From IMG/VR virus record IMGVR_UViG_3300034072_002211, positions 62,001 to 126,000 of that record: a stretch of 64,000 nt of DNA; one strand, written 5' to 3'. The notes under the pieces were generated by a model. The model did no database searches, was not told the origin of the DNA, and saw nothing but the letters and a program-made list of their open reading frames with translations. A program made the position numbers and the translations under genes. This document shows, piece after piece, positions 3,396 to 8,992 of this stretch; position 1 is the first letter of the stretch, and each line of letters begins with the position of its first letter.

Positions 3396-3880
3396 TAGCC
3401 CCAGGCCAGCTTGAACATGGCCGCGTCGCCTTTACGGAGGAAGCGATACTTGTAGGGGTTGATTCTAGCCCAGCGACTCTTGGTGCAACCCTCTACCCAC
3501 GCGAAAATCTCTTTCTGCATCGCGTAGCTACACTCGCCCTGCGCCTCGCGCTCGGCGATCTTGTCCTGATTGACCTTGATATCATGACCAAAGAATGGCT
3601 GCCACCAATTCAGGGGACTGCCGTATTTCATGAACATCGCGAGGGCCGAACTCGACGTCGCAATAAACCCAGGCACCAACATGCCGAGATTTGGTCCATC
3701 GCCAATCAGAAACAAAGCCGGTGAAATGCTGATCAGTAACAGGATGACCAGCAAAAGTGCCAGACTTCCTGGTCCCGTGTTAAGCAGCCAGCGTAGGGGC
3801 TTCCACGAAGGTCCCAAGCGATCGAGCTCGCTCGTAGAGTTGTCGTGACGCAATCTGCTTTCCCTTCGCCTCAACCTCAA
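3395..3880 (-). CDS. Membrane-anchored FKLxW-family protein (start uncertain)
   Basis: Two hydrophobic segments, then YRFLRKGDAAMFKLAWG; 5' end overlaps the uvsE 3' end. Confidence 0.7.
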   Translation of the reverse strand: MRLRRRESRLRHDNSTSELDRLGPSWKPLRWLLNTGPGSLALLLVILLLISISPALFLIGDGPNLGMLVPGFIATSSSALAMFMKYGSPLNWWQPFFGHDIKVNQDKIAEREAQGECSYAMQKEIFAWVEGCTKSRWARINPYKYRFLRKGDAAMFKLAWG

Positions 3881-4838
3881 GATCGGTCCAGACCAAGTGG
3901 CTCAACGCCCAGTCATTGCTGCCTTGATTCCAGCAGCCATATGAATGCGCGCGAAGCTTGCTTGGCTTGTGACCTGCTTCGCTGAGCAGCTTAAAGTCAG
4001 GTTGGCCAACAGAGCAAGCCCCTTTCAGAAGCTCTTCCGATGAAGTGGAGAAATGCCCAAGGGGACGAACGCCCATCCAGCTGAGCTTGATCCAGTCGAT
4101 GCGAGGATCGTTGGGCTGAATATACTCACCCCCGCTCTCAACCCAATGGTGGTGAATGTCCAGCACAATGGGAACCACGTGATAGAGCTGGGCTGCGATC
4201 ATCTCGTCCAAGGAGCAGCCAAACTCGTCATTCTCAATGGTCAAGAGATTGCGAAGCGTGAGGCTCAGTTTGTTCTTGATCGTGTCCTTGAGCTGAACCA
4301 AGCCAGGATCGAGATTGTTGTTTGCGTGGATATTGATCGCAAACCCACCGGAATGCCAGCTCTCTCCATAACCCATGGACTCAGCCACATAGGCGTGATA
4401 GTTGAGATCCACGATGCTATTGGCGAGCACTTCGGGCTTCTGAGTGCAGAGCGTCGTGAACTGGCCGGGATGAGTGCAGAGCCTGATGCCATTTGTGTCC
4501 GCAAATGCCCTCACAGGGGCCAGACCGCCCTCGATTAGCTTGCGGGTGTCCAGGTCGCGATAAACCCACGCGAAGTCCTCTACGGTGTATGCGGGGAGGA
4601 AATCGCTGGTGATGCGGAACAGTCGCATCTCTCTGGGCTGCTCTGAGATCCACTTGAGCTGCCGCATGAGCGTTTCGATGTTGTGTTGGACCAGACCATA
4701 GAGCTTGGCATACTGGTCATCGCGCTTCATCTTGCGGAGCGCGGTCAGCGTCGTGGACGCTTGGTTCATGGACTTTGCGAGGGTCTTGTCAGACGTCTCG
4801 AACTTACAACAGAAGCCTACGCGGGGTGTGTCACTCAT
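3780..4838 (-). CDS. uvsE: UV-damage endonuclease
   Basis: GFCCK, RLFRITSDFLP, RLCTHPGQF, LTIENDE, VLDIHHHW motifs; sigma70-like TTGCTT-N17-TATATA at 4872-4844. Confidence 0.92.
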   Translation of the reverse strand: MSDTPRVGFCCKFETSDKTLAKSMNQASTTLTALRKMKRDDQYAKLYGLVQHNIETLMRQLKWISEQPREMRLFRITSDFLPAYTVEDFAWVYRDLDTRKLIEGGLAPVRAFADTNGIRLCTHPGQFTTLCTQKPEVLANSIVDLNYHAYVAESMGYGESWHSGGFAINIHANNNLDPGLVQLKDTIKNKLSLTLRNLLTIENDEFGCSLDEMIAAQLYHVVPIVLDIHHHWVESGGEYIQPNDPRIDWIKLSWMGVRPLGHFSTSSEELLKGACSVGQPDFKLLSEAGHKPSKLRAHSYGCWNQGSNDWALSHLVWTDLEVEAKGKQIASRQLYERARSLGTFVEAPTLAA

Positions 4839-4876: not shown

Positions 4877-5026
4877 TTAGGGGAGATTTCCGCCACCAGC
4901 AAGGCCAGCGATGAACAACAGAATGATGTTGATCACTGGCCCCACTATCGACTCCTGATCGCGCACCTTGGTAATGATGTCAACGATCTGGAATGCGAAG
5001 AGAACGGCCAGGGCAATCCAGAACAT
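4877..5026 (-). CDS. 49-aa two-TM membrane peptide (not in ORF track)
   Basis: TAATG-coupled: MFWIALAVLFAFQIVDIITKVRDQESIVGPVINIILLFIAGLAGGGNLP. Confidence 0.65.
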   Translation of the reverse strand: MFWIALAVLFAFQIVDIITKVRDQESIVGPVINIILLFIAGLAGGGNLP

Positions 5027-5430
5027 TACCACCGGGCGACTACCTGAATGTCGACGATCTCGCCGAACTCAGTGGTCACCTTGCCGACCATGTGCTTGCG
5101 GTTGTCCATCCAGAAGTCGTTTTCATACTCCCGGACTTCGCGGTTGGTACCGCCGAGGGAATTGCCCTCGTCATCGTGCGTGGGCCGATGGGTGGAAATA
5201 CGGGTCCAGTTCGTGGGATCCAGCAGCGCGGGCCAGTAAGTCGTGGTCATCTCACCCGACTGTTCCTTGCTGACGATATTGAACTGATTGCGGACGATCT
5301 CCGGCTCGGTCTGGATCTTGTCGATCAGCGCCTGGAGGCAATCCGAGGACGAGAATCGCTTCTCGCCCGGATCACGGAACGCAGGGGTCAGTCCGATGCC
5401 TGCGATGGGATTGAATCCGCCGTTGCTCAT
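5026..5430 (-). CDS. Hypothetical protein
   Basis: TAATG overlap with the ligase stop gives start MSNGG at 5430. Confidence 0.75.
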   Translation of the reverse strand: MSNGGFNPIAGIGLTPAFRDPGEKRFSSSDCLQALIDKIQTEPEIVRNQFNIVSKEQSGEMTTTYWPALLDPTNWTRISTHRPTHDDEGNSLGGTNREVREYENDFWMDNRKHMVGKVTTEFGEIVDIQVVARW

Positions 5431-7400
5431 TAGCCCCACAACTCCTTTGCCTTGGTGATCGAGATCACGTTGTCTTCACCGATGAGCTGCCGGGCCTTGA
5501 CCAGCTTGCTCGAATTGCCCGTGGGATCCTTGGCCACGAGGTAAGTCGTGTCCTTGTTGACCGAGGAGCCGATGCGACCCGAGCGGGCCTCAATCTTAGC
5601 TTCCAGATCCTTGTCGCGGATGCCCGTGAATACCACCGTGACGCCCTCGAGGTCGCCGCCGGTGACCTTCTCCTTGGGAGCCACCAGCGTGTAGTGGCCG
5701 TCGATGGCCTTGAGGAAGTCGAGGAACTTGGGCAGGTTGTCCACGATCGTCTGCGCGGTCTTGCGCTCGAAGCCCTCAAGGGCTGCGATTTCCTGGACCG
5801 TGATCGTGCCCTCGAGGATGCGCTCGTTGGGGAACGCATCGCAGACCTTGGTCATCTTGCGCCGACCGATACCGCGGCCGAGCAGCGAGGTTGCGCCAGC
5901 GAGGATGCCGAGTTCCACGTTGCCCAGCTTGAGCTTCAGACCGTTGTAGATCTTCGTGCCCGCGCTGTCGCCGGCTGCGGCCTTCAGCGTCGCTTCGTCT
6001 GCGAGGATGATGTCCACCGGCGTCTTCAGGCCCGCATCATAGAGCTTCTCGATGCTGCCCTCGCGCAGGTGAGGAACGTCCAGGCCGGTCACGCCGAAGA
6101 TTGCGTTGATGACCTCGAGCTGAACCTGACGGTTGTTCTCGGGGTTCAGCATGACGAGGTCCACGTCGCCCTCGGTCCAGCCCATCAGGCCGAACTCAGT
6201 AACGTCCGGCATCTGCGCGCCCAGGGGAGCAATCTCGACCACCTTCTGGATGAAGGGGATCACGTCGCCCGAGCGGGTGATCTGGATCTTGGCGCCCGGC
6301 CCGATGATGTTGTCCCGGATGAACTTGGCGTTGAAGCCAGTGGCGTAGGTGATGGTCACGCCGACGAGGTCCACGGGGTCGATTTCCACGCGGGGCTTGA
6401 GGTAGCCGGCCTTGCTGGGGTTCCAGTGGACCTTCTTCACGGTCGCGATGGCCACGTTGTCCGCGCCGCCGACCTTGAACTTGCGCGAATACATAGGGTT
6501 GATGCTGCTGGAGTTGCGGCGCAGCGCAGCGCGCAGGTCAGCATTGTCGAGGTCGATAACGATGCCGTCGAGTGGGGTCGGGCTCTCCTTACGGCGCTTG
6601 TTCAGCAGCGCAGTCAGGAAATCGTCGGTCAATTGGTGGCCCTTGACCACCACGTAGGGAGTGACCTCATAGCCCATGTCCTCGAGCAGCTTGAATTGCT
6701 CTTGCTTGCCCATCTTGGGATCGACGATACTGGTCGCGACCAGCTTGACCGTGTTGTAGAAGAGGTCCGGTGACTCGCTGGCGTTCATGCGACCCGCAAC
6801 ATAGTTGCGCGAGTTCTTGTAGACGCGACCACCCTCGGCCTCTGCCTGGGCCTTCTGCGCCTGGAAGACAGCCTCTTCCATGATGACCTCGAGACGCACG
6901 GCCACGTTGCCCTTGGCGGTCGTCGGGCAACACTTGATCCGGCTCATATGCCGCGTGATGTCTGCGCCCTGGAAGCCGTTGCCGCGCGAATATGCGATCT
7001 TCAGCTTTCCGGCGGCGTGGACGTTGAGTGCGCTGGTGCCGTCCTGCTTGTCCGAGATCACGAAGTCCTCGTTCTCCCAGCCGTTCTTGCGGACCCACTC
7101 GATGGTCTCACCCTCGTAGCACTGGTCCAGGGAGCCCATGGGGTAGGGCAAGTCGATCTTGCCGCCGCGCACGTCGCTGCCGACCGTCGAGAGGAAAAGG
7201 TTCTTGGGATCGATGCTCTTCAGCATCTTCTCGAGCTCATCATACTGAGCGTCCGAGAGGAAGCTTTCGCCGTCGCCGTTGTGATACTGGTCCGATGCCT
7301 CGGTCAGGATGTGGACGAGCACCTCGGGGGTGGGTTCGGTTTCCCCACTGAGAATCTGCTGGGATGCTTCGACCGCATCGAAAAGCTGAACCGTTGTCAT
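5430..7400 (-). CDS. ligA: NAD-dependent DNA ligase
   Basis: Domain Ia YHNGD..SDAQYD, adenylation KQDG, RNYVAG, DGIVI, OB fold TGFNA..RSGDVIP, HhH repeats, C-terminal BRCT VVFTG. Confidence 0.95.
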   Translation of the reverse strand: MTTVQLFDAVEASQQILSGETEPTPEVLVHILTEASDQYHNGDGESFLSDAQYDELEKMLKSIDPKNLFLSTVGSDVRGGKIDLPYPMGSLDQCYEGETIEWVRKNGWENEDFVISDKQDGTSALNVHAAGKLKIAYSRGNGFQGADITRHMSRIKCCPTTAKGNVAVRLEVIMEEAVFQAQKAQAEAEGGRVYKNSRNYVAGRMNASESPDLFYNTVKLVATSIVDPKMGKQEQFKLLEDMGYEVTPYVVVKGHQLTDDFLTALLNKRRKESPTPLDGIVIDLDNADLRAALRRNSSSINPMYSRKFKVGGADNVAIATVKKVHWNPSKAGYLKPRVEIDPVDLVGVTITYATGFNAKFIRDNIIGPGAKIQITRSGDVIPFIQKVVEIAPLGAQMPDVTEFGLMGWTEGDVDLVMLNPENNRQVQLEVINAIFGVTGLDVPHLREGSIEKLYDAGLKTPVDIILADEATLKAAAGDSAGTKIYNGLKLKLGNVELGILAGATSLLGRGIGRRKMTKVCDAFPNERILEGTITVQEIAALEGFERKTAQTIVDNLPKFLDFLKAIDGHYTLVAPKEKVTGGDLEGVTVVFTGIRDKDLEAKIEARSGRIGSSVNKDTTYLVAKDPTGNSSKLVKARQLIGEDNVISITKAKELWG

Positions 7401-7442
7401 CTGGACTCCTTGTGTTTCGATCTACCTTCGATCTAACACAGG

Positions 7443-7844
7443 CTACTCAGAAGTCAAGCGGATAAGCTCTTTCTGGATCGTCTCCATTGGAAGGTGCTTG
7501 GCAAGCGATTTCAAGAGGATCCTGCGATACCAGAAGTTCCACTCCTTGGCATCAGCACGCAAAGCGGCTTCTTCTACAGCCGCTTGAGCTTCTGCGCCCA
7601 CTAGGTCTCCATGAGCTAGTTTCATAGCCAGATCGTAGAACTCATTGAACGTGAGAGTGCCGGGTTCTTCATCCTCTTCATCGAGCGCGGGAACGCGAGG
7701 CAGACCAAAGTTATAGTCTGCTGAAGTGCTCAAGCTAAGTCCAATCCAGAAATGTTCAACATCCTGGTCCCAAGCTTGTTCAATGATGGATCGGTGATCG
7801 CCTTGAGGATTCATGAGGGAGAGGACGATGTCAATGGGTTTCAT
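7443..7844 (-). CDS. Stand-alone N-terminal (DNA-binding) domain resembling phage ATP-dependent DNA ligases
   Basis: TFNEFYDLAMKL...GAEAQAAV...EWNFWYRRILLKSL resembles the N-domain of T4-like ATP ligases; no KxDG adenylation domain follows. Confidence 0.65.
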   Translation of the reverse strand: MKPIDIVLSLMNPQGDHRSIIEQAWDQDVEHFWIGLSLSTSADYNFGLPRVPALDEEDEEPGTLTFNEFYDLAMKLAHGDLVGAEAQAAVEEAALRADAKEWNFWYRRILLKSLAKHLPMETIQKELIRLTSE

Positions 7845-7851
7845 CGTCCCC

Positions 7852-8460
7852 TCACTTCTTCTTAGTGAGCCACTTGTTCAATTCGTCGCGAGCGACTACC
7901 ACGTAGCCCTGCTCTGCGAGCATATTCATGAATAGGTGTGGCAATTCGTAATCAACTCTGCGATATTGTTCTGGTAGATCTTCCCAGGGGCGCATAAGTG
8001 GATGTTGCTTACTCGATTCGTTAACACTTAGACCAAATGACCAACCGGACTTGGCACGTGCCTCATACCAGCGTTGGTGTTGGTGCTTTGCCAGCGTTTC
8101 ACAAAGGTTGTTGTAATCGTCCTCTTCCATTACAACTGCGTCAGCCGGCCCATGACGCGCGGATAACACTTCTTCAGAACTTGTTTCAATTTCGCCCTCG
8201 GGGTATGCTTCTTCAATAACCTCCGCTTCCTTCGCAGTAAGGTCGCGGGTCAGAGGAACTTCATAATAGTGGGTACCAGCTTTGGTCTCTTTGTGGACCA
8301 TGAAGACCACATCTGGGTCACCTTGAGGATTTGTTGTCTGCACGCTGCTCAGCACGCCGCTGGGCAGGTTGTTCTTTACACAATGATACCACGCGATCGC
8401 CTCTTCCTTGGAAAGAGGCGAGCTCGTCTTTAGTCGGATGAAGAGAGGAATCTCTGTCAT
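7852..8460 (-). CDS. RyR-domain protein
   Basis: LAKHQHQRWYEARAKSGWSFG...HPLMRPWEDLPEQYRRVD; ATAAGTA at 8466-8472 upstream. Confidence 0.85.
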   Translation of the reverse strand: MTEIPLFIRLKTSSPLSKEEAIAWYHCVKNNLPSGVLSSVQTTNPQGDPDVVFMVHKETKAGTHYYEVPLTRDLTAKEAEVIEEAYPEGEIETSSEEVLSARHGPADAVVMEEDDYNNLCETLAKHQHQRWYEARAKSGWSFGLSVNESSKQHPLMRPWEDLPEQYRRVDYELPHLFMNMLAEQGYVVVARDELNKWLTKKK

Positions 8461-8461
8461 G

Positions 8462-8992
8462 TTAATACTTATCTGGCTCCACAGCTGGTAGATCAGGATT
8501 ATCTACAGCAGGAGGCGTCTGAACATTGACCTGAGTCACTGGAGTAGGCGCCGGAGTCTGCTGGCTGGGAATGTAATAGGTTGGAACCATTGTTGGCGTA
8601 TAGGGAGAACGCTCGCTTTCACCCTGCTGACGCAGAGCTTCAATCTGTGCGCTACCTCGGGTCCAAGCTGCCACACCCAGGATGGCACCAAATGCCACGT
8701 GGAAGAGACCGCTACCCTGCATAGTCAGTGGCTGCCAAGGCGTCTTGTTCTGGATCATCGCAATAGCAACCTGTGGATCGAGGTCCTTGATTGCTGCGGC
8801 CATCTGAGCCATGTTGGCTCCCTTGAAGCCCATGAACGCAGGAGCGATGATGAAGTCAAAGAGACAGATCATCAGATAAACCACTGCGGCCGCAGGACGC
8901 CAAGTCCTATTCAGCCAACTCTCACCACTGTTCAGAGGATCGAAGGGATCCTTCTTTACCTGCTTCTTTTGTGCCATTAGCCGATCTCCCAT
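8462..8992 (-). CDS. Putative holin-like membrane protein (3-TM holin type); start may be 8977
   Basis: WRPAAAVVYLMICLFDFIIAP and FHVAFGAILGVAAWTR hydrophobic segments; ATAAATA at 9006-9012. Confidence 0.6.
   Translation of the reverse strand: MGDRLMAQKKQVKKDPFDPLNSGESWLNRTWRPAAAVVYLMICLFDFIIAPAFMGFKGANMAQMAAAIKDLDPQVAIAMIQNKTPWQPLTMQGSGLFHVAFGAILGVAAWTRGSAQIEALRQQGESERSPYTPTMVPTYYIPSQQTPAPTPVTQVNVQTPPAVDNPDLPAVEPDKY

What the first reader, a model, noticed from the sequence alone, without database searches (positions are those of the whole stretch)
5430..7844. ATP-ligase N-terminal domain retained beside an NAD-ligase: apparent in-place enzyme displacement
Seen: the 133-aa ORF 7443..7844 ends ...EWNFWYRRILLKSL... 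with no adenylation domain. ligA follows 43 nt later, with its own TTGACT-type promoter inside the end of that ORF and a visibly more C/G-ending codon style. Established: T4-like phages usually encode an ATP-dependent ligase whose N-terminal domain carries a similar W..W..RILxKDL motif. Inference: LigA replaced the catalytic part while the DNA-binding domain survived, possibly as an accessory factor in trans.
Basis: partly seen in the sequence, partly recalled or inferred. Interest (0 to 1): 0.6.

Follow-up and report, generated by a model that had tools for sequence, protein, structure and literature searches.

The report
Orphan ligase DNA-binding domain beside LigA
A giant phage keeps only the DNA-gripping front end of an ATP-type DNA ligase as its own small conserved gene, next to a complete NAD-type ligase gene that has taken the place of the lost catalytic part, so the leftover piece probably still has a job.

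Summary
ORF 7443..7844(-) (133 aa) is a stand-alone copy of the helical DNA-binding (DB) domain of T4/Pmar-type ATP-dependent DNA ligases. It matches residues 20-130 of Pmar-Lig (E 5e-11). The AF2 model (pLDDT 95.5) superposes on Pmar-Lig (TM 0.85) and the T4 ligase DB domain (TM 0.61). A complete NAD-dependent LigA (5430..7400-) starts 42 nt downstream.

The pair is not specific to this genome. About 20 loci of Atu_ph07-like jumbo phages carry DBD-LigA, mostly as RyR-DBD-LigA-...-UvdE. All 35 stand-alone DBDs sampled form one clade. Their nearest relatives are N-termini of full ATP ligases lying between RyR and UvdE genes in related phages. Five complete DBD+LigA genomes plus Phosso have no ATP-ligase catalytic domain. 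The complete 543-kb ATP-ligase phage has no LigA. The DBD is under purifying selection (dN/dS 0.05-0.28).

Corrections: the event is old, at the base of the clade. LigA's GC-rich codons (GC3 0.86 vs 0.54) persist across relatives, so they do not mark a recent transfer. A conserved TTGACA-type promoter in the DBD's last codons is supported comparatively.

Action in trans with LigA is untested. Iyer et al. 2021 described stand-alone ligase DBDs in other, ligase-less phages.

The parts
7443..7844 (-). Stand-alone DNA-binding (DB) domain of a T4/Pmar-type ATP-dependent DNA ligase, 133 aa. All-helical, net charge -12. No catalytic domain.
   Evidence: phmmer vs PDB gives E 5e-11 to residues 20-130 of Pmar-Lig (6RAS and related entries). 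The AF2 model has pLDDT 95.5. Foldseek gives TM 0.85 to 6RAR and 0.61 to T4 ligase 6DT1/5WFY. 56 homologs of 123-145 aa were found. dN/dS is 0.05-0.28.
5430..7400 (-). Complete NAD-dependent DNA ligase (LigA), 656 aa. Domain Ia motif near residues 39-56, NTase with Lys118 (KxDG), OB, HhH and BRCT. No Cys4 zinc finger.
   Evidence: Pfam PF01653, PF03120, PF00533 and a weak HHH_5; PHROG 3869 at E 8e-130. Collinear with Thermus filiformis LigA 1DGS over residues 48-639. K118, D120 and G121 are invariant and no Cys is invariant among 32 relatives.
7452..7457 (-). -35-like hexamer TTGACT, formed by the Leu-Thr codons near the end of the DBD gene.
   Evidence: TTGAC sits at the same codons in 16 of 16 related loci, although TTG is only 27% of Leu codons in these genes.
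7430..7438 (-). Extended -10-like element TGt-TAGATC, 16 nt after the -35-like hexamer.
   Evidence: TG-n-TA at a 16-18 nt spacing is conserved across relatives. The hexamer is TATAAT in Atu_ph07 and L050, and TATAAC in Phosso and L053. The tool's own sigma-70 scan did not flag this site in the window.
7418..7424 (-). TAGATCG box between the -10-like element and the ribosome-binding site. Its role is unknown.
   Evidence: TAGATC is identical in 11 of 11 core relatives. No conserved RNA structure was found around it.
7406..7411 (-). Shine-Dalgarno AAGGAG, 5 nt before the ligA ATG.
   Evidence: Read from the sequence. GGAG is conserved in all relatives.
7852..8460 (-). RyR-domain protein gene (202 aa), ending 7 nt before the DBD start. 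It is the conserved upstream neighbour of the ligase locus.
   Evidence: Pfam PF02026 at E 9.5e-13. It lies upstream of the DBD in most stand-alone loci, and upstream of the full ATP ligase in L015, L016 and L018.
5026..5439 (-). 137-aa ORF of unknown function, overlapping the end of ligA by 10 nt. Conserved downstream neighbour with GC3 0.79.
   Evidence: 67-91% identical in 11 IMG/VR loci (L003-L014) and about 31% in Phosso. No Pfam or PHROG hit.
3780..4838 (-). UvdE UV-damage endonuclease (352 aa). It marks the downstream edge of the conserved block.
   Evidence: Pfam PF03851 at E 1.4e-32 and PHROG 8420. It lies downstream of LigA in the stand-alone loci and downstream of the ATP ligase in L015 and L016.

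Best explanation
ORF 7443..7844 encodes a free-standing, selectively maintained copy of the compact helical DNA-binding domain that normally forms the N-terminus of T4/Pmar-type ATP-dependent DNA ligases. It arose once, in the common ancestor of the Atu_ph07-like jumbo phages. At that point the ancestral ATP ligase lost its nucleotidyltransferase-OB core, and a complete NAD-dependent LigA gene took over nick sealing at the same place in the genome, between the RyR-domain gene and uvdE. This much is shown or strongly inferred. The next step is inferred only. The surviving domain is most likely still used in DNA joining as a separate subunit. It would act as a DNA/nick-docking or replisome-docking adaptor that works with the phage LigA, whose gene has stayed directly downstream in nearly every descendant. 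ligA additionally has its own sigma-70-like promoter built into the last codons of the DBD gene, so the two products can be made in different amounts or at different times.
For: Identity of the domain:
- phmmer E 5e-11 to Pmar-Lig residues 20-130.
- AF2 model with pLDDT 95.5; TM 0.85 to 6RAR and 0.61 to the T4 ligase DB domain, followed by human LigIV DB domains.
- BFVD hits are Atu_ph07 gp283 and full phage ligases.
- The V51-P52 and L110 positions correspond to V58-P59 and L115 of Pmar-Lig. V58 and L115 shape its alpha3-alpha4 DNA-contact loop (PMC6698739).

Function retained:
- 56 close homologs and 35 stand-alone entries in the wider tree, 20 of them representatives of 50%-identity clusters.
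- 24 invariant columns in the alignment.
- dN/dS 0.066 at dS 0.24, median 0.20.

Single origin from a fused ligase:
- Stand-alone DBDs form one clade (100/99; SH-aLRT 100), requiring one change of state.
- The nearest fused forms are L018, L015 and L016/L017. They are full ATP ligases by Pfam.
- The fused form occurs in 497 cultured phage records.

Same locus:
- TM3-RyR-DBD-LigA-o137-UvdE, in full or in part, in L001-L014.
- RyR...ATP ligase...UvdE on one strand in L015 and L016, and RyR about 700 bp upstream of the ligase in L018.

Mutual exclusion:
- No PF01068 or A3-profile hit in complete DBD+LigA genomes. No PF01653 hit in the complete 543-kb ATP-ligase phage.

Linkage to LigA:
- The DBD is directly upstream of LigA in about 20 loci. 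This holds even where RyR is separated (L058) or absent (L059).

Promoter:
Against: - No direct evidence that the DBD binds LigA. The complex prediction scored 0.00, which the tool says counts neither for nor against.
- LigA has its own HhH domain. In E. coli LigA this domain fills the position on DNA that the DB domain fills in ATP ligases (architectures reviewed in PMC7470946). Both at one nick may clash.
- The stand-alone domain is very acidic: net -12 here and a median of -8, against 0 for fused DB domains. That argues against strong DNA binding on its own.
- One nested relative (L056) keeps RyR-DBD but has no ligase gene downstream.
- LigAs of the same family work without any nearby DBD in other phages (L051, L052, L060).
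- The synteny with ATP-ligase phages is loose in L015 and L016, where several unrelated genes lie between RyR, ligase and UvdE.
- The trees are unrooted. The polarity rests on the ubiquity of the fused form.
Confidence: 0.55

Rival explanations
1. The stand-alone domain is functional but does not work with the phage LigA. It would serve another partner: the RyR-domain protein encoded 7 nt upstream, the phage sliding clamp, or a host factor. Alternatively it would act as a nick-binding regulator.
For: RyR-DBD adjacency is nearly as conserved as DBD-LigA adjacency, with overlapping or 7-nt junctions. L056 keeps RyR-DBD without a downstream ligase. RyR is also linked to the full ATP ligase in L018, L015 and L016. 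ligA has its own promoter, so it is not strictly co-expressed with the DBD. Iyer et al. 2021 proposed that stand-alone ligase DBDs in ligase-less phages recruit a host ligase. In T4 the ligase uses a loop in its N-terminal region to bind the gp45 clamp (PMC6698739 discussion).
Against: DBD-LigA adjacency survives where RyR has been separated or is absent (L058, L059). The stand-alone domain, like Pmar-Lig, lacks the T4-type 26-residue clamp loop; this rests on its length and its close superposition on Pmar-Lig. No interaction of any kind was tested.
Confidence: 0.3
2. The replacement took two steps rather than a direct swap. The ATP ligase first decayed to a stand-alone DBD that recruited the host's NAD-dependent LigA, as Iyer et al. 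proposed for ligase-less phages. A LigA gene was captured next to it only later.
For: Ligase-less phages with stand-alone DBDs exist (weak BFVD matches to small proteins of phiM12 and Synechococcus phages). LigAs of the same family occur in other phages without a DBD and could be donors. L056 shows that a DBD without an adjacent ligase is viable.
Against: L056 is nested inside the DBD+LigA clade, so it looks secondary rather than intermediate. No basal DBD-only lineage was found. The DBD and LigA trees share the same two major clades, which fits LigA being present from the start. The P-SSM2 example protein shows no detectable similarity to this family.
Confidence: 0.2
3. The small ORF is a non-functional remnant of a truncated ATP-ligase gene that has not yet decayed.
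For: It ends at the DB/NTase boundary and lacks any catalytic residues.
Against: dN/dS is 0.05-0.28 with saturated dS. Length and frame are kept in 56 close homologs and across 35 stand-alone entries, 20 of them 50%-identity cluster representatives. There are 24 invariant columns. The AF2 model has pLDDT 95.5.
Confidence: 0.02
4. The phage has a split ATP ligase, with the catalytic NTase-OB part encoded elsewhere in the genome and assembling with this domain.
For: The window's own record is only about 60% complete, so absence there proves little.
Against: PF01068 finds no NTase-OB in six complete or near-complete relatives. The lineage-specific profile A3 finds none in the four of them it was run on, yet scores 2.4e-94 on the control.
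Confidence: 0.03

Closest known systems
N-terminal DB domain of Pmar-Lig (Prochlorococcus marinus ATP-dependent DNA ligase; PDB 6RAR, 6RAS, 6RAU, 6RCE) and of T4 DNA ligase (6DT1, 5WFY)
   Same: It has the same compact helical fold (TM 0.85 and 0.61) and the same EWN-x-W/F-YRR-hydrophobic-K-x-L helix. The Val-Pro of the alpha3-alpha4 loop is conserved. The length matches and it ends at the domain boundary.
   Different: It is a separate polypeptide with no NTase-OB core. Ser (or Thr, Lys) replaces the Asp that is present in every fused relative carrying the motif (29 of 30). It is much more acidic. It lacks the T4 clamp-binding loop.
Stand-alone ATP-ligase DNA-binding domains of subgroup 2.1 jumbo phages (Iyer et al. 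2021, Viruses 13:63, PMC7824862; example AAX44695.1 of Prochlorococcus phage P-SSM2)
   Same: It is a free-standing ligase-type DB domain encoded by a large phage. The idea that it cooperates with an NAD-dependent ligase supplied in trans is also shared.
   Different: Those phages encode no ligase at all. Here a phage LigA gene is the immediate downstream neighbour. The two groups are not detectably related by profile comparison. The present family is a separate clade whose sisters are full ATP ligases.
[quoted passage not shown] 2021)
   Same: The mutual exclusion of the two ligase types is reproduced here among related complete genomes.
   Different: Here the replacement can be located to one locus, and it left a domain of the old enzyme behind as a conserved gene.
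Atu_ph07 gp283/gp282 and Sinorhizobium phage Phosso CDS 210/211
   Same: They are orthologous pairs in cultured phages (33% and 36.5% identity for the DBD; 40% and 50% for LigA) with the same upstream RyR-domain homologue (annotated as RyR only in Phosso).
   Different: gp283 is annotated 'hypothetical protein' and Phosso CDS 210 simply 'DNA ligase'. Neither record describes it as a stand-alone DB domain paired with LigA.

Membership tests
DB (DNA-binding) domain of ATP-dependent DNA ligases, compact T4/Pmar type | Significant sequence similarity to the N-terminal DB domain of a characterised ATP ligase | tested here: met
   E 5e-11, query residues 13-125 against Pmar-Lig 20-130
DB (DNA-binding) domain of ATP-dependent DNA ligases, compact T4/Pmar type | Compact all-helical bundle that superposes on solved DB domains | tested here: met
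   8 helices in the model, pLDDT 95.5. TM 0.85 to 6RAR and 0.61-0.62 to T4 6DT1/5WFY.
DB (DNA-binding) domain of ATP-dependent DNA ligases, compact T4/Pmar type | Binds the minor groove of nicked duplex DNA through inter-helix loops | not testable with these tools
   Only the loop-shaping residues (V51-P52, G83, L110) are seen to be conserved. The strong negative charge is a caveat.
ATP-dependent DNA ligase (enzyme) | Nucleotidyltransferase domain with the KxDG lysine, plus an OB domain, in the same protein | tested here: not met
   No PF01068 or PF14743 hit. The protein ends at the DB/NTase boundary. The label 'DNA ligase' used for the Phosso orthologue is therefore not justified.
NAD-dependent DNA ligase LigA (gene 5430..7400) | Domain Ia, NTase with KxDG lysine, OB, HhH and BRCT in order | tested here: met
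   Pfam and PHROG hits. Collinear with 1DGS over residues 48-639 and with 2OWO over 39-388. K118, D120 and G121 are invariant.
NAD-dependent DNA ligase LigA (gene 5430..7400) | Cys4 zinc finger between the OB and HhH domains | tested here: not met
   No invariant or near-invariant Cys among 32 family members. This is a Zn-finger-less LigA variant.
Stand-alone ligase DB domains of ligase-less jumbo phages (Iyer et al. 2021) | Free-standing DB domain in a phage genome that lacks any DNA ligase | tested here: not met
   A LigA gene lies 42 nt downstream here and in about 20 related loci.
Stand-alone ligase DB domains of ligase-less jumbo phages (Iyer et al. 2021) | Sequence relationship to the published example AAX44695.1 | tested here: inconclusive
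   hhalign probability 0.2% against the single sequence. Weak fold matches (TM about 0.5) to small phiM12 and Synechococcus phage proteins.

The most novel reading that the evidence does not exclude
The DBD and the phage LigA form a two-component hybrid ligase. In this reading an ATP-ligase-type DNA-binding domain, encoded as a separate subunit, docks an NAD-dependent, zinc-finger-less LigA onto nicks or onto the phage replisome. That would make it a chimera of the two ligase superfamily branches, held together for a long evolutionary time.
Probability: 0.3. Interest if true: 0.7.

Novelty: new variant of a known kind. Interest (0 to 1): 0.52.

Why it matters
Replacement of one enzyme by an unrelated one is usually inferred only from presence/absence patterns. 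Here the seam is visible. The old ATP ligase's catalytic core is gone and an NAD ligase sits in its place. The old enzyme's DNA-binding module has been kept under selection as its own gene ever since.

If the module works with LigA, it would be a natural example of a DNA-binding domain from one ligase branch serving a catalytic core from the other. That bears on how ligases are recruited to nicks and replisomes, and on ligase engineering. It would also give experimental footing to the 2021 proposal that orphan ligase DBDs in phages recruit NAD ligases.

Two cultured phages, Atu_ph07 and Phosso, carry the pair, so the question is directly testable.

Tried and rejected
- **Complex prediction of LigA + DBD**. 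Score 0.00, verdict 'no answer'. It is not used for or against binding.
- **Conserved RNA hairpin in the 42-nt spacer** (CCTGTGTT...AACACAAGG). RNAalifold on 11 relatives gave no consensus pairs. Rejected.
- **The tool's sigma-70 scan** found no promoter at this site in the window. The promoter case rests on comparative conservation instead.
- **LigA's GC-rich codons as a sign of recent horizontal acquisition.** Rejected. The GC3 excess over the DBD is seen in 11 of 12 relatives despite dS above 1. Other genes in the genome share it, and Atu_ph07 shows the reverse.
- **Pfam and PHROG scans of the small ORF** gave nothing. The DB domain of this ligase type has no Pfam model (also stated in PMC7470946).
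- **Relation to the published stand-alone DBD AAX44695.1.** None was detectable.
- **RNA-seq evidence for expression or a transcription start.** No RNA run holds the stretch, only metagenome contigs.
- **TAGATCG box as a widespread phage promoter element.** The composite pattern occurs only 3 times in 277 kb against 0.32 expected. That is too few to call a class.
- **Giant cadherin-repeat proteins hit by the DBD profile**. Judged unrelated.
- **Supplementary tables of Iyer et al. 2021.** They are not held, so it could not be checked whether that paper lists Atu_ph07 gp283.
Full report
**1. What is in the sequence**

On the minus strand, a 133-aa ORF (7443..7844) is followed after 42 nt by a 656-aa ORF (5430..7400).

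The large ORF is a complete NAD-dependent DNA ligase.
- Pfam finds the adenylation, OB, HhH and BRCT domains. PHROG 3869 matches at E 8e-130.
- It is collinear with Thermus filiformis LigA over residues 48-639.
- The KxDG lysine (K118) is invariant among 32 relatives. No cysteine is conserved, so the Cys4 zinc finger is missing.

The small ORF has no Pfam or PHROG hit.

LigA forms a GC-rich island of 0.60-0.64 against about 0.50 on its flanks. Its GC3 is 0.858, rank 5 of 320 ORFs in the 277-kb record. The small ORF has GC3 0.537, rank 260.

**2. What the small ORF is**

- phmmer against all PDB sequences finds one family only: the ATP-dependent DNA ligase of Prochlorococcus marinus (Pmar-Lig; 6RAS, 6RAR, 6RAU, 6RCE). 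The match is E 5e-11 and covers residues 20-130 of that enzyme, which is its N-terminal DNA-binding (DB) domain. EWNFWYRRILLKSL aligns to EWNGFYRRVLIKDL.
- An AF2 model built on 28 homologs is all-helical with pLDDT 95.5.
- Foldseek puts Pmar-Lig first (TM 0.85, E 1e-7). The T4 ligase DB domain follows (6DT1, 5WFY; TM 0.61-0.62), then the human ligase IV DB domains.
- In BFVD the best hits are Atu_ph07 gp283 and full-length phage ligases.
[quoted passage not shown] They contact the DNA minor groove through inter-helix loops (PMC7470946, PMC6698739).

The ORF is therefore a stand-alone DB domain of a T4/Pmar-type ATP ligase. It stops at the DB/NTase boundary.

**3. It is a conserved gene family, not a relic**

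- The word search found 56 proteins of 123-145 aa at 45-81% identity, on contigs up to about 470 kb. One row, P0023, lists a 958-kb contig.
- The alignment has 24 invariant columns.
- Pairwise dN/dS is 0.066 at dS 0.24 and 0.18 at dS 0.61, with a median of 0.20. LigA has a median of 0.13.
- The profile search over 1.8 billion representatives found 253 clusters. Among the 150 listed are 20 clean stand-alone proteins and 46 full-length ATP ligases of 400 aa or more. There are also 280-370-aa proteins; the seven of these that were scanned all carry DB plus at least part of an NTase domain.

**4. Genomic context and relatives**

The cultured jumbo phages Atu_ph07 (490 kb) and Sinorhizobium phage Phosso (469 kb) carry the same arrangement: RyR-domain gene, small ORF, NAD ligase. 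Phosso's small ORF is annotated 'DNA ligase' and Atu_ph07's 'hypothetical protein'.

In IMG/VR, 12 loci (L003-L014) have the stand-alone gene. Where the contig extends far enough, it lies in the block TM3-RyR-DBD-LigA-o137-UvdE. L014 lacks the RyR match.

Further loci reached through more distant LigA or DBD proteins keep DBD directly upstream of LigA (L049, L050, L053, L054, L058, L059). This holds even where RyR has been separated by an inserted gene (L058) or is absent (L059).

There is one exception. L056 keeps RyR-DBD but has no recognisable ligase downstream.

LigAs of the same family also occur in other phages with no DBD nearby (L051, L052, L060).

**5. Evidence for displacement at the same locus**

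- The other 31 IMG/VR matches (L015-L045) are N-termini of longer ORFs. The 24 that are complete on their contigs measure 417-452 aa, plus one of 817 aa. All six scanned with Pfam are ATP ligases with PF01068 and PF14743.
- In a careful maximum-likelihood tree the stand-alone DBDs form one clade (100/99). The nearest fused sequences are L018, then L015 and L016/L017.
- A larger tree with 35 stand-alone and 58 fused sequences again needs only one change of state (SH-aLRT 100). It nests L056 beside Atu_ph07, so the missing LigA in L056 is secondary.
- The nearest fused ligases come from phages that share the neighbourhood. L018 is from a complete 543-kb genome and has the RyR gene about 700 bp upstream of its ligase. 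L015 and L016 have RyR upstream and UvdE downstream, all on one strand.
- The two ligase types exclude each other.
  - PF01068 finds nothing in Atu_ph07, Phosso, four IMG/VR genomes at least 90% complete, or the window's own record.
  - A profile of the lineage's own NTase-OB cores (A3) scores 2.4e-94 on the 543-kb phage. It scores nothing (E up to 1) on three of those IMG/VR genomes, on Atu_ph07 or on the window's own record.
  - The 543-kb phage in turn has no PF01653.
- Fused ligases of this type occur in 497 cultured phage records. DB domains are N-terminal in ATP ligases of all domains of life (PMC7470946). The fused state is therefore taken as ancestral.

The remaining reservations are that the trees are unrooted and that the synteny in L015 and L016 is loose.

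**6. What does not follow**

The GC-rich codon style of ligA is not a fresh-transfer scar.
- LigA exceeds the DBD in GC3 by 0.10-0.35 in 11 of 12 relatives, although synonymous sites are saturated. Atu_ph07 shows the opposite.
- The genome has a broad GC3 distribution, and o137 and other genes are also in the GC-rich class.

The split is old. It predates the divergence of the window's clade from the Atu_ph07/Phosso clade. The DBD and LigA trees both show those two clades.

In the unrooted LigA tree a DBD-less clade attaches between them. A root on that clade would make the DBD-linked LigAs monophyletic, but this is not resolved.

**7. The promoter**

- TTGAC occupies the same Leu-Thr codons in 16 of 16 loci, although TTG is only 27% of Leu codons in these genes.
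- TG-n-TA follows after 16-18 nt. The hexamer is TATAAT in Atu_ph07 and L050, TATAAC in Phosso and L053, and TAGATC in the window.
The generic scan did not flag it, and no RNA data exist.
- An invariant TAGATC(G) box lies between it and the Shine-Dalgarno sequence. No RNA structure is conserved there.

**8. How it probably works**

Shown: the domain is folded, conserved, and almost always encoded immediately before LigA.

Inferred: it still acts in DNA joining as a separate subunit with LigA, either as a nick or duplex binder or as a docking adaptor.

Arguments against this reading:
- The complex prediction gave no answer.
- LigA keeps its own HhH DNA clamp.
- The stand-alone domains are strongly acidic: net -12 here and a median of -8, against 0 in fused domains.
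- L056 and the DBD-less LigAs show that neither partner strictly needs the other nearby.

One sequence change accompanies the split. All fused domains that carry the motif read ...RRIL[IL]KDL, whereas the stand-alone ones have Ser, Thr or Lys in place of the Asp. This position is next to the alpha7-alpha8 loop, which in Pmar-Lig touches both DNA and the OB domain. The change would fit the loss of an intramolecular contact, but that was not tested.

The main rival is a LigA-independent role, for example with the RyR-domain protein. That gene is linked to the locus in both ligase types.

**9. Prior knowledge and novelty**

Iyer et al. 2021 (PMC7824862) had already noted two things:
- ATP and NAD ligases are complementary among jumbo phages.

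Their example, P-SSM2 AAX44695.1, shows no detectable similarity to the present family. Atu_ph07 belongs to their subgroup 2.2. I found no paper describing a DBD-LigA gene pair.

The finding is therefore a new variant of a known kind. It is an independent, single-origin family of orphan ligase DB domains, fixed next to a phage LigA at the locus of the displaced ATP ligase.

**10. Verdict**

- Observation: confirmed.
- Interpretation: supported for the evolutionary claim, open for the functional one.
- Interest is moderate. The result is clean, testable in two cultured phages, and gives substance to an earlier conjecture. Its most interesting reading, a hybrid two-component ligase, remains unproven.

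Noticed in passing
L018:6001-8454 (insert about L018:6493-6972): The 817-aa ATP ligase of the complete 543-kb phage has a second, degenerate NTase-like stretch between its DB domain and the real NTase-OB core. That stretch matches positions 101-199 of profile A3 at E 5e-13. This looks like an internal domain duplication.
   Followed up: partly
window 7852..8460 (-): The RyR-domain protein gene is linked to the ligase locus in both the ATP-ligase phages and the DBD+LigA phages. It often overlaps or abuts the DBD start. One relative (L056) keeps RyR-DBD without LigA. A functional tie between the RyR protein and the ligase DB domain is possible.
   Followed up: partly
window 5430..7400 (-), residues about 390-435: The whole LigA family of these phages lacks the four zinc-finger cysteines between the OB and HhH domains. 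No Cys is conserved in 32 sequences.
   Followed up: partly
window 7418..7424 and 7429..7435 (-): The TAGATCG box upstream of ligA is invariant (as TAGATC) in 11 of 11 core relatives and is duplicated in the window. The composite TTGACN-spacer-TA-spacer-TAGATC occurs 3 times in the 277-kb record against 0.32 in shuffles. The other two sites are at G000 130567(+) and 271045(-).
   Followed up: partly
window 7443..7844 (-) and relatives: Stand-alone DB domains are much more acidic (median net charge -8, window -12) than fused ones (median 0). They also replace the Asp of the ...KDL motif, which every fused relative carrying the motif has, by Ser, Thr or Lys.
   Followed up: partly
whole record G000 (window = 62001-126000): GC3 is very heterogeneous among genes (mean 0.62, sd 0.10). 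LigA and the downstream 137-aa ORF belong to a GC3-rich class, while DBD, RyR and the 3-TM gene belong to a GC3-poor class. The contrast is conserved in most relatives, which suggests gene-class codon usage rather than recent transfer.
   Followed up: partly
window 3780..4838 (-) and 5026..5439 (-): A UvdE UV-damage endonuclease and a conserved 137-aa ORF of unknown function travel with the ligase genes. The block may be a nick-generating and nick-sealing repair module.
   Followed up: no
P0177, P0198, P0243 (profile search hits): The DBD profile gives many-stretch matches to giant cadherin-repeat proteins of 2167-4098 aa. They are almost certainly unrelated to ligases, but the reason for the score was not examined.
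   Followed up: partly
record G000: IMG/VR labels the record 'provirus' and about 60% complete. Yet its relatives are 417-497-kb jumbo phages, two of them with terminal repeats. Identical DBD and LigA proteins also occur on a 468,011-bp contig. The only near-complete holder among sequencing runs is a subsurface metagenome.
   Followed up: no
window 8462..8992 (-): A 176-aa protein gives weak matches to 3-TM holin families (Pfam PF11351 E 1e-3; PHROG 3427). It is part of the conserved block upstream of RyR.
   Followed up: no
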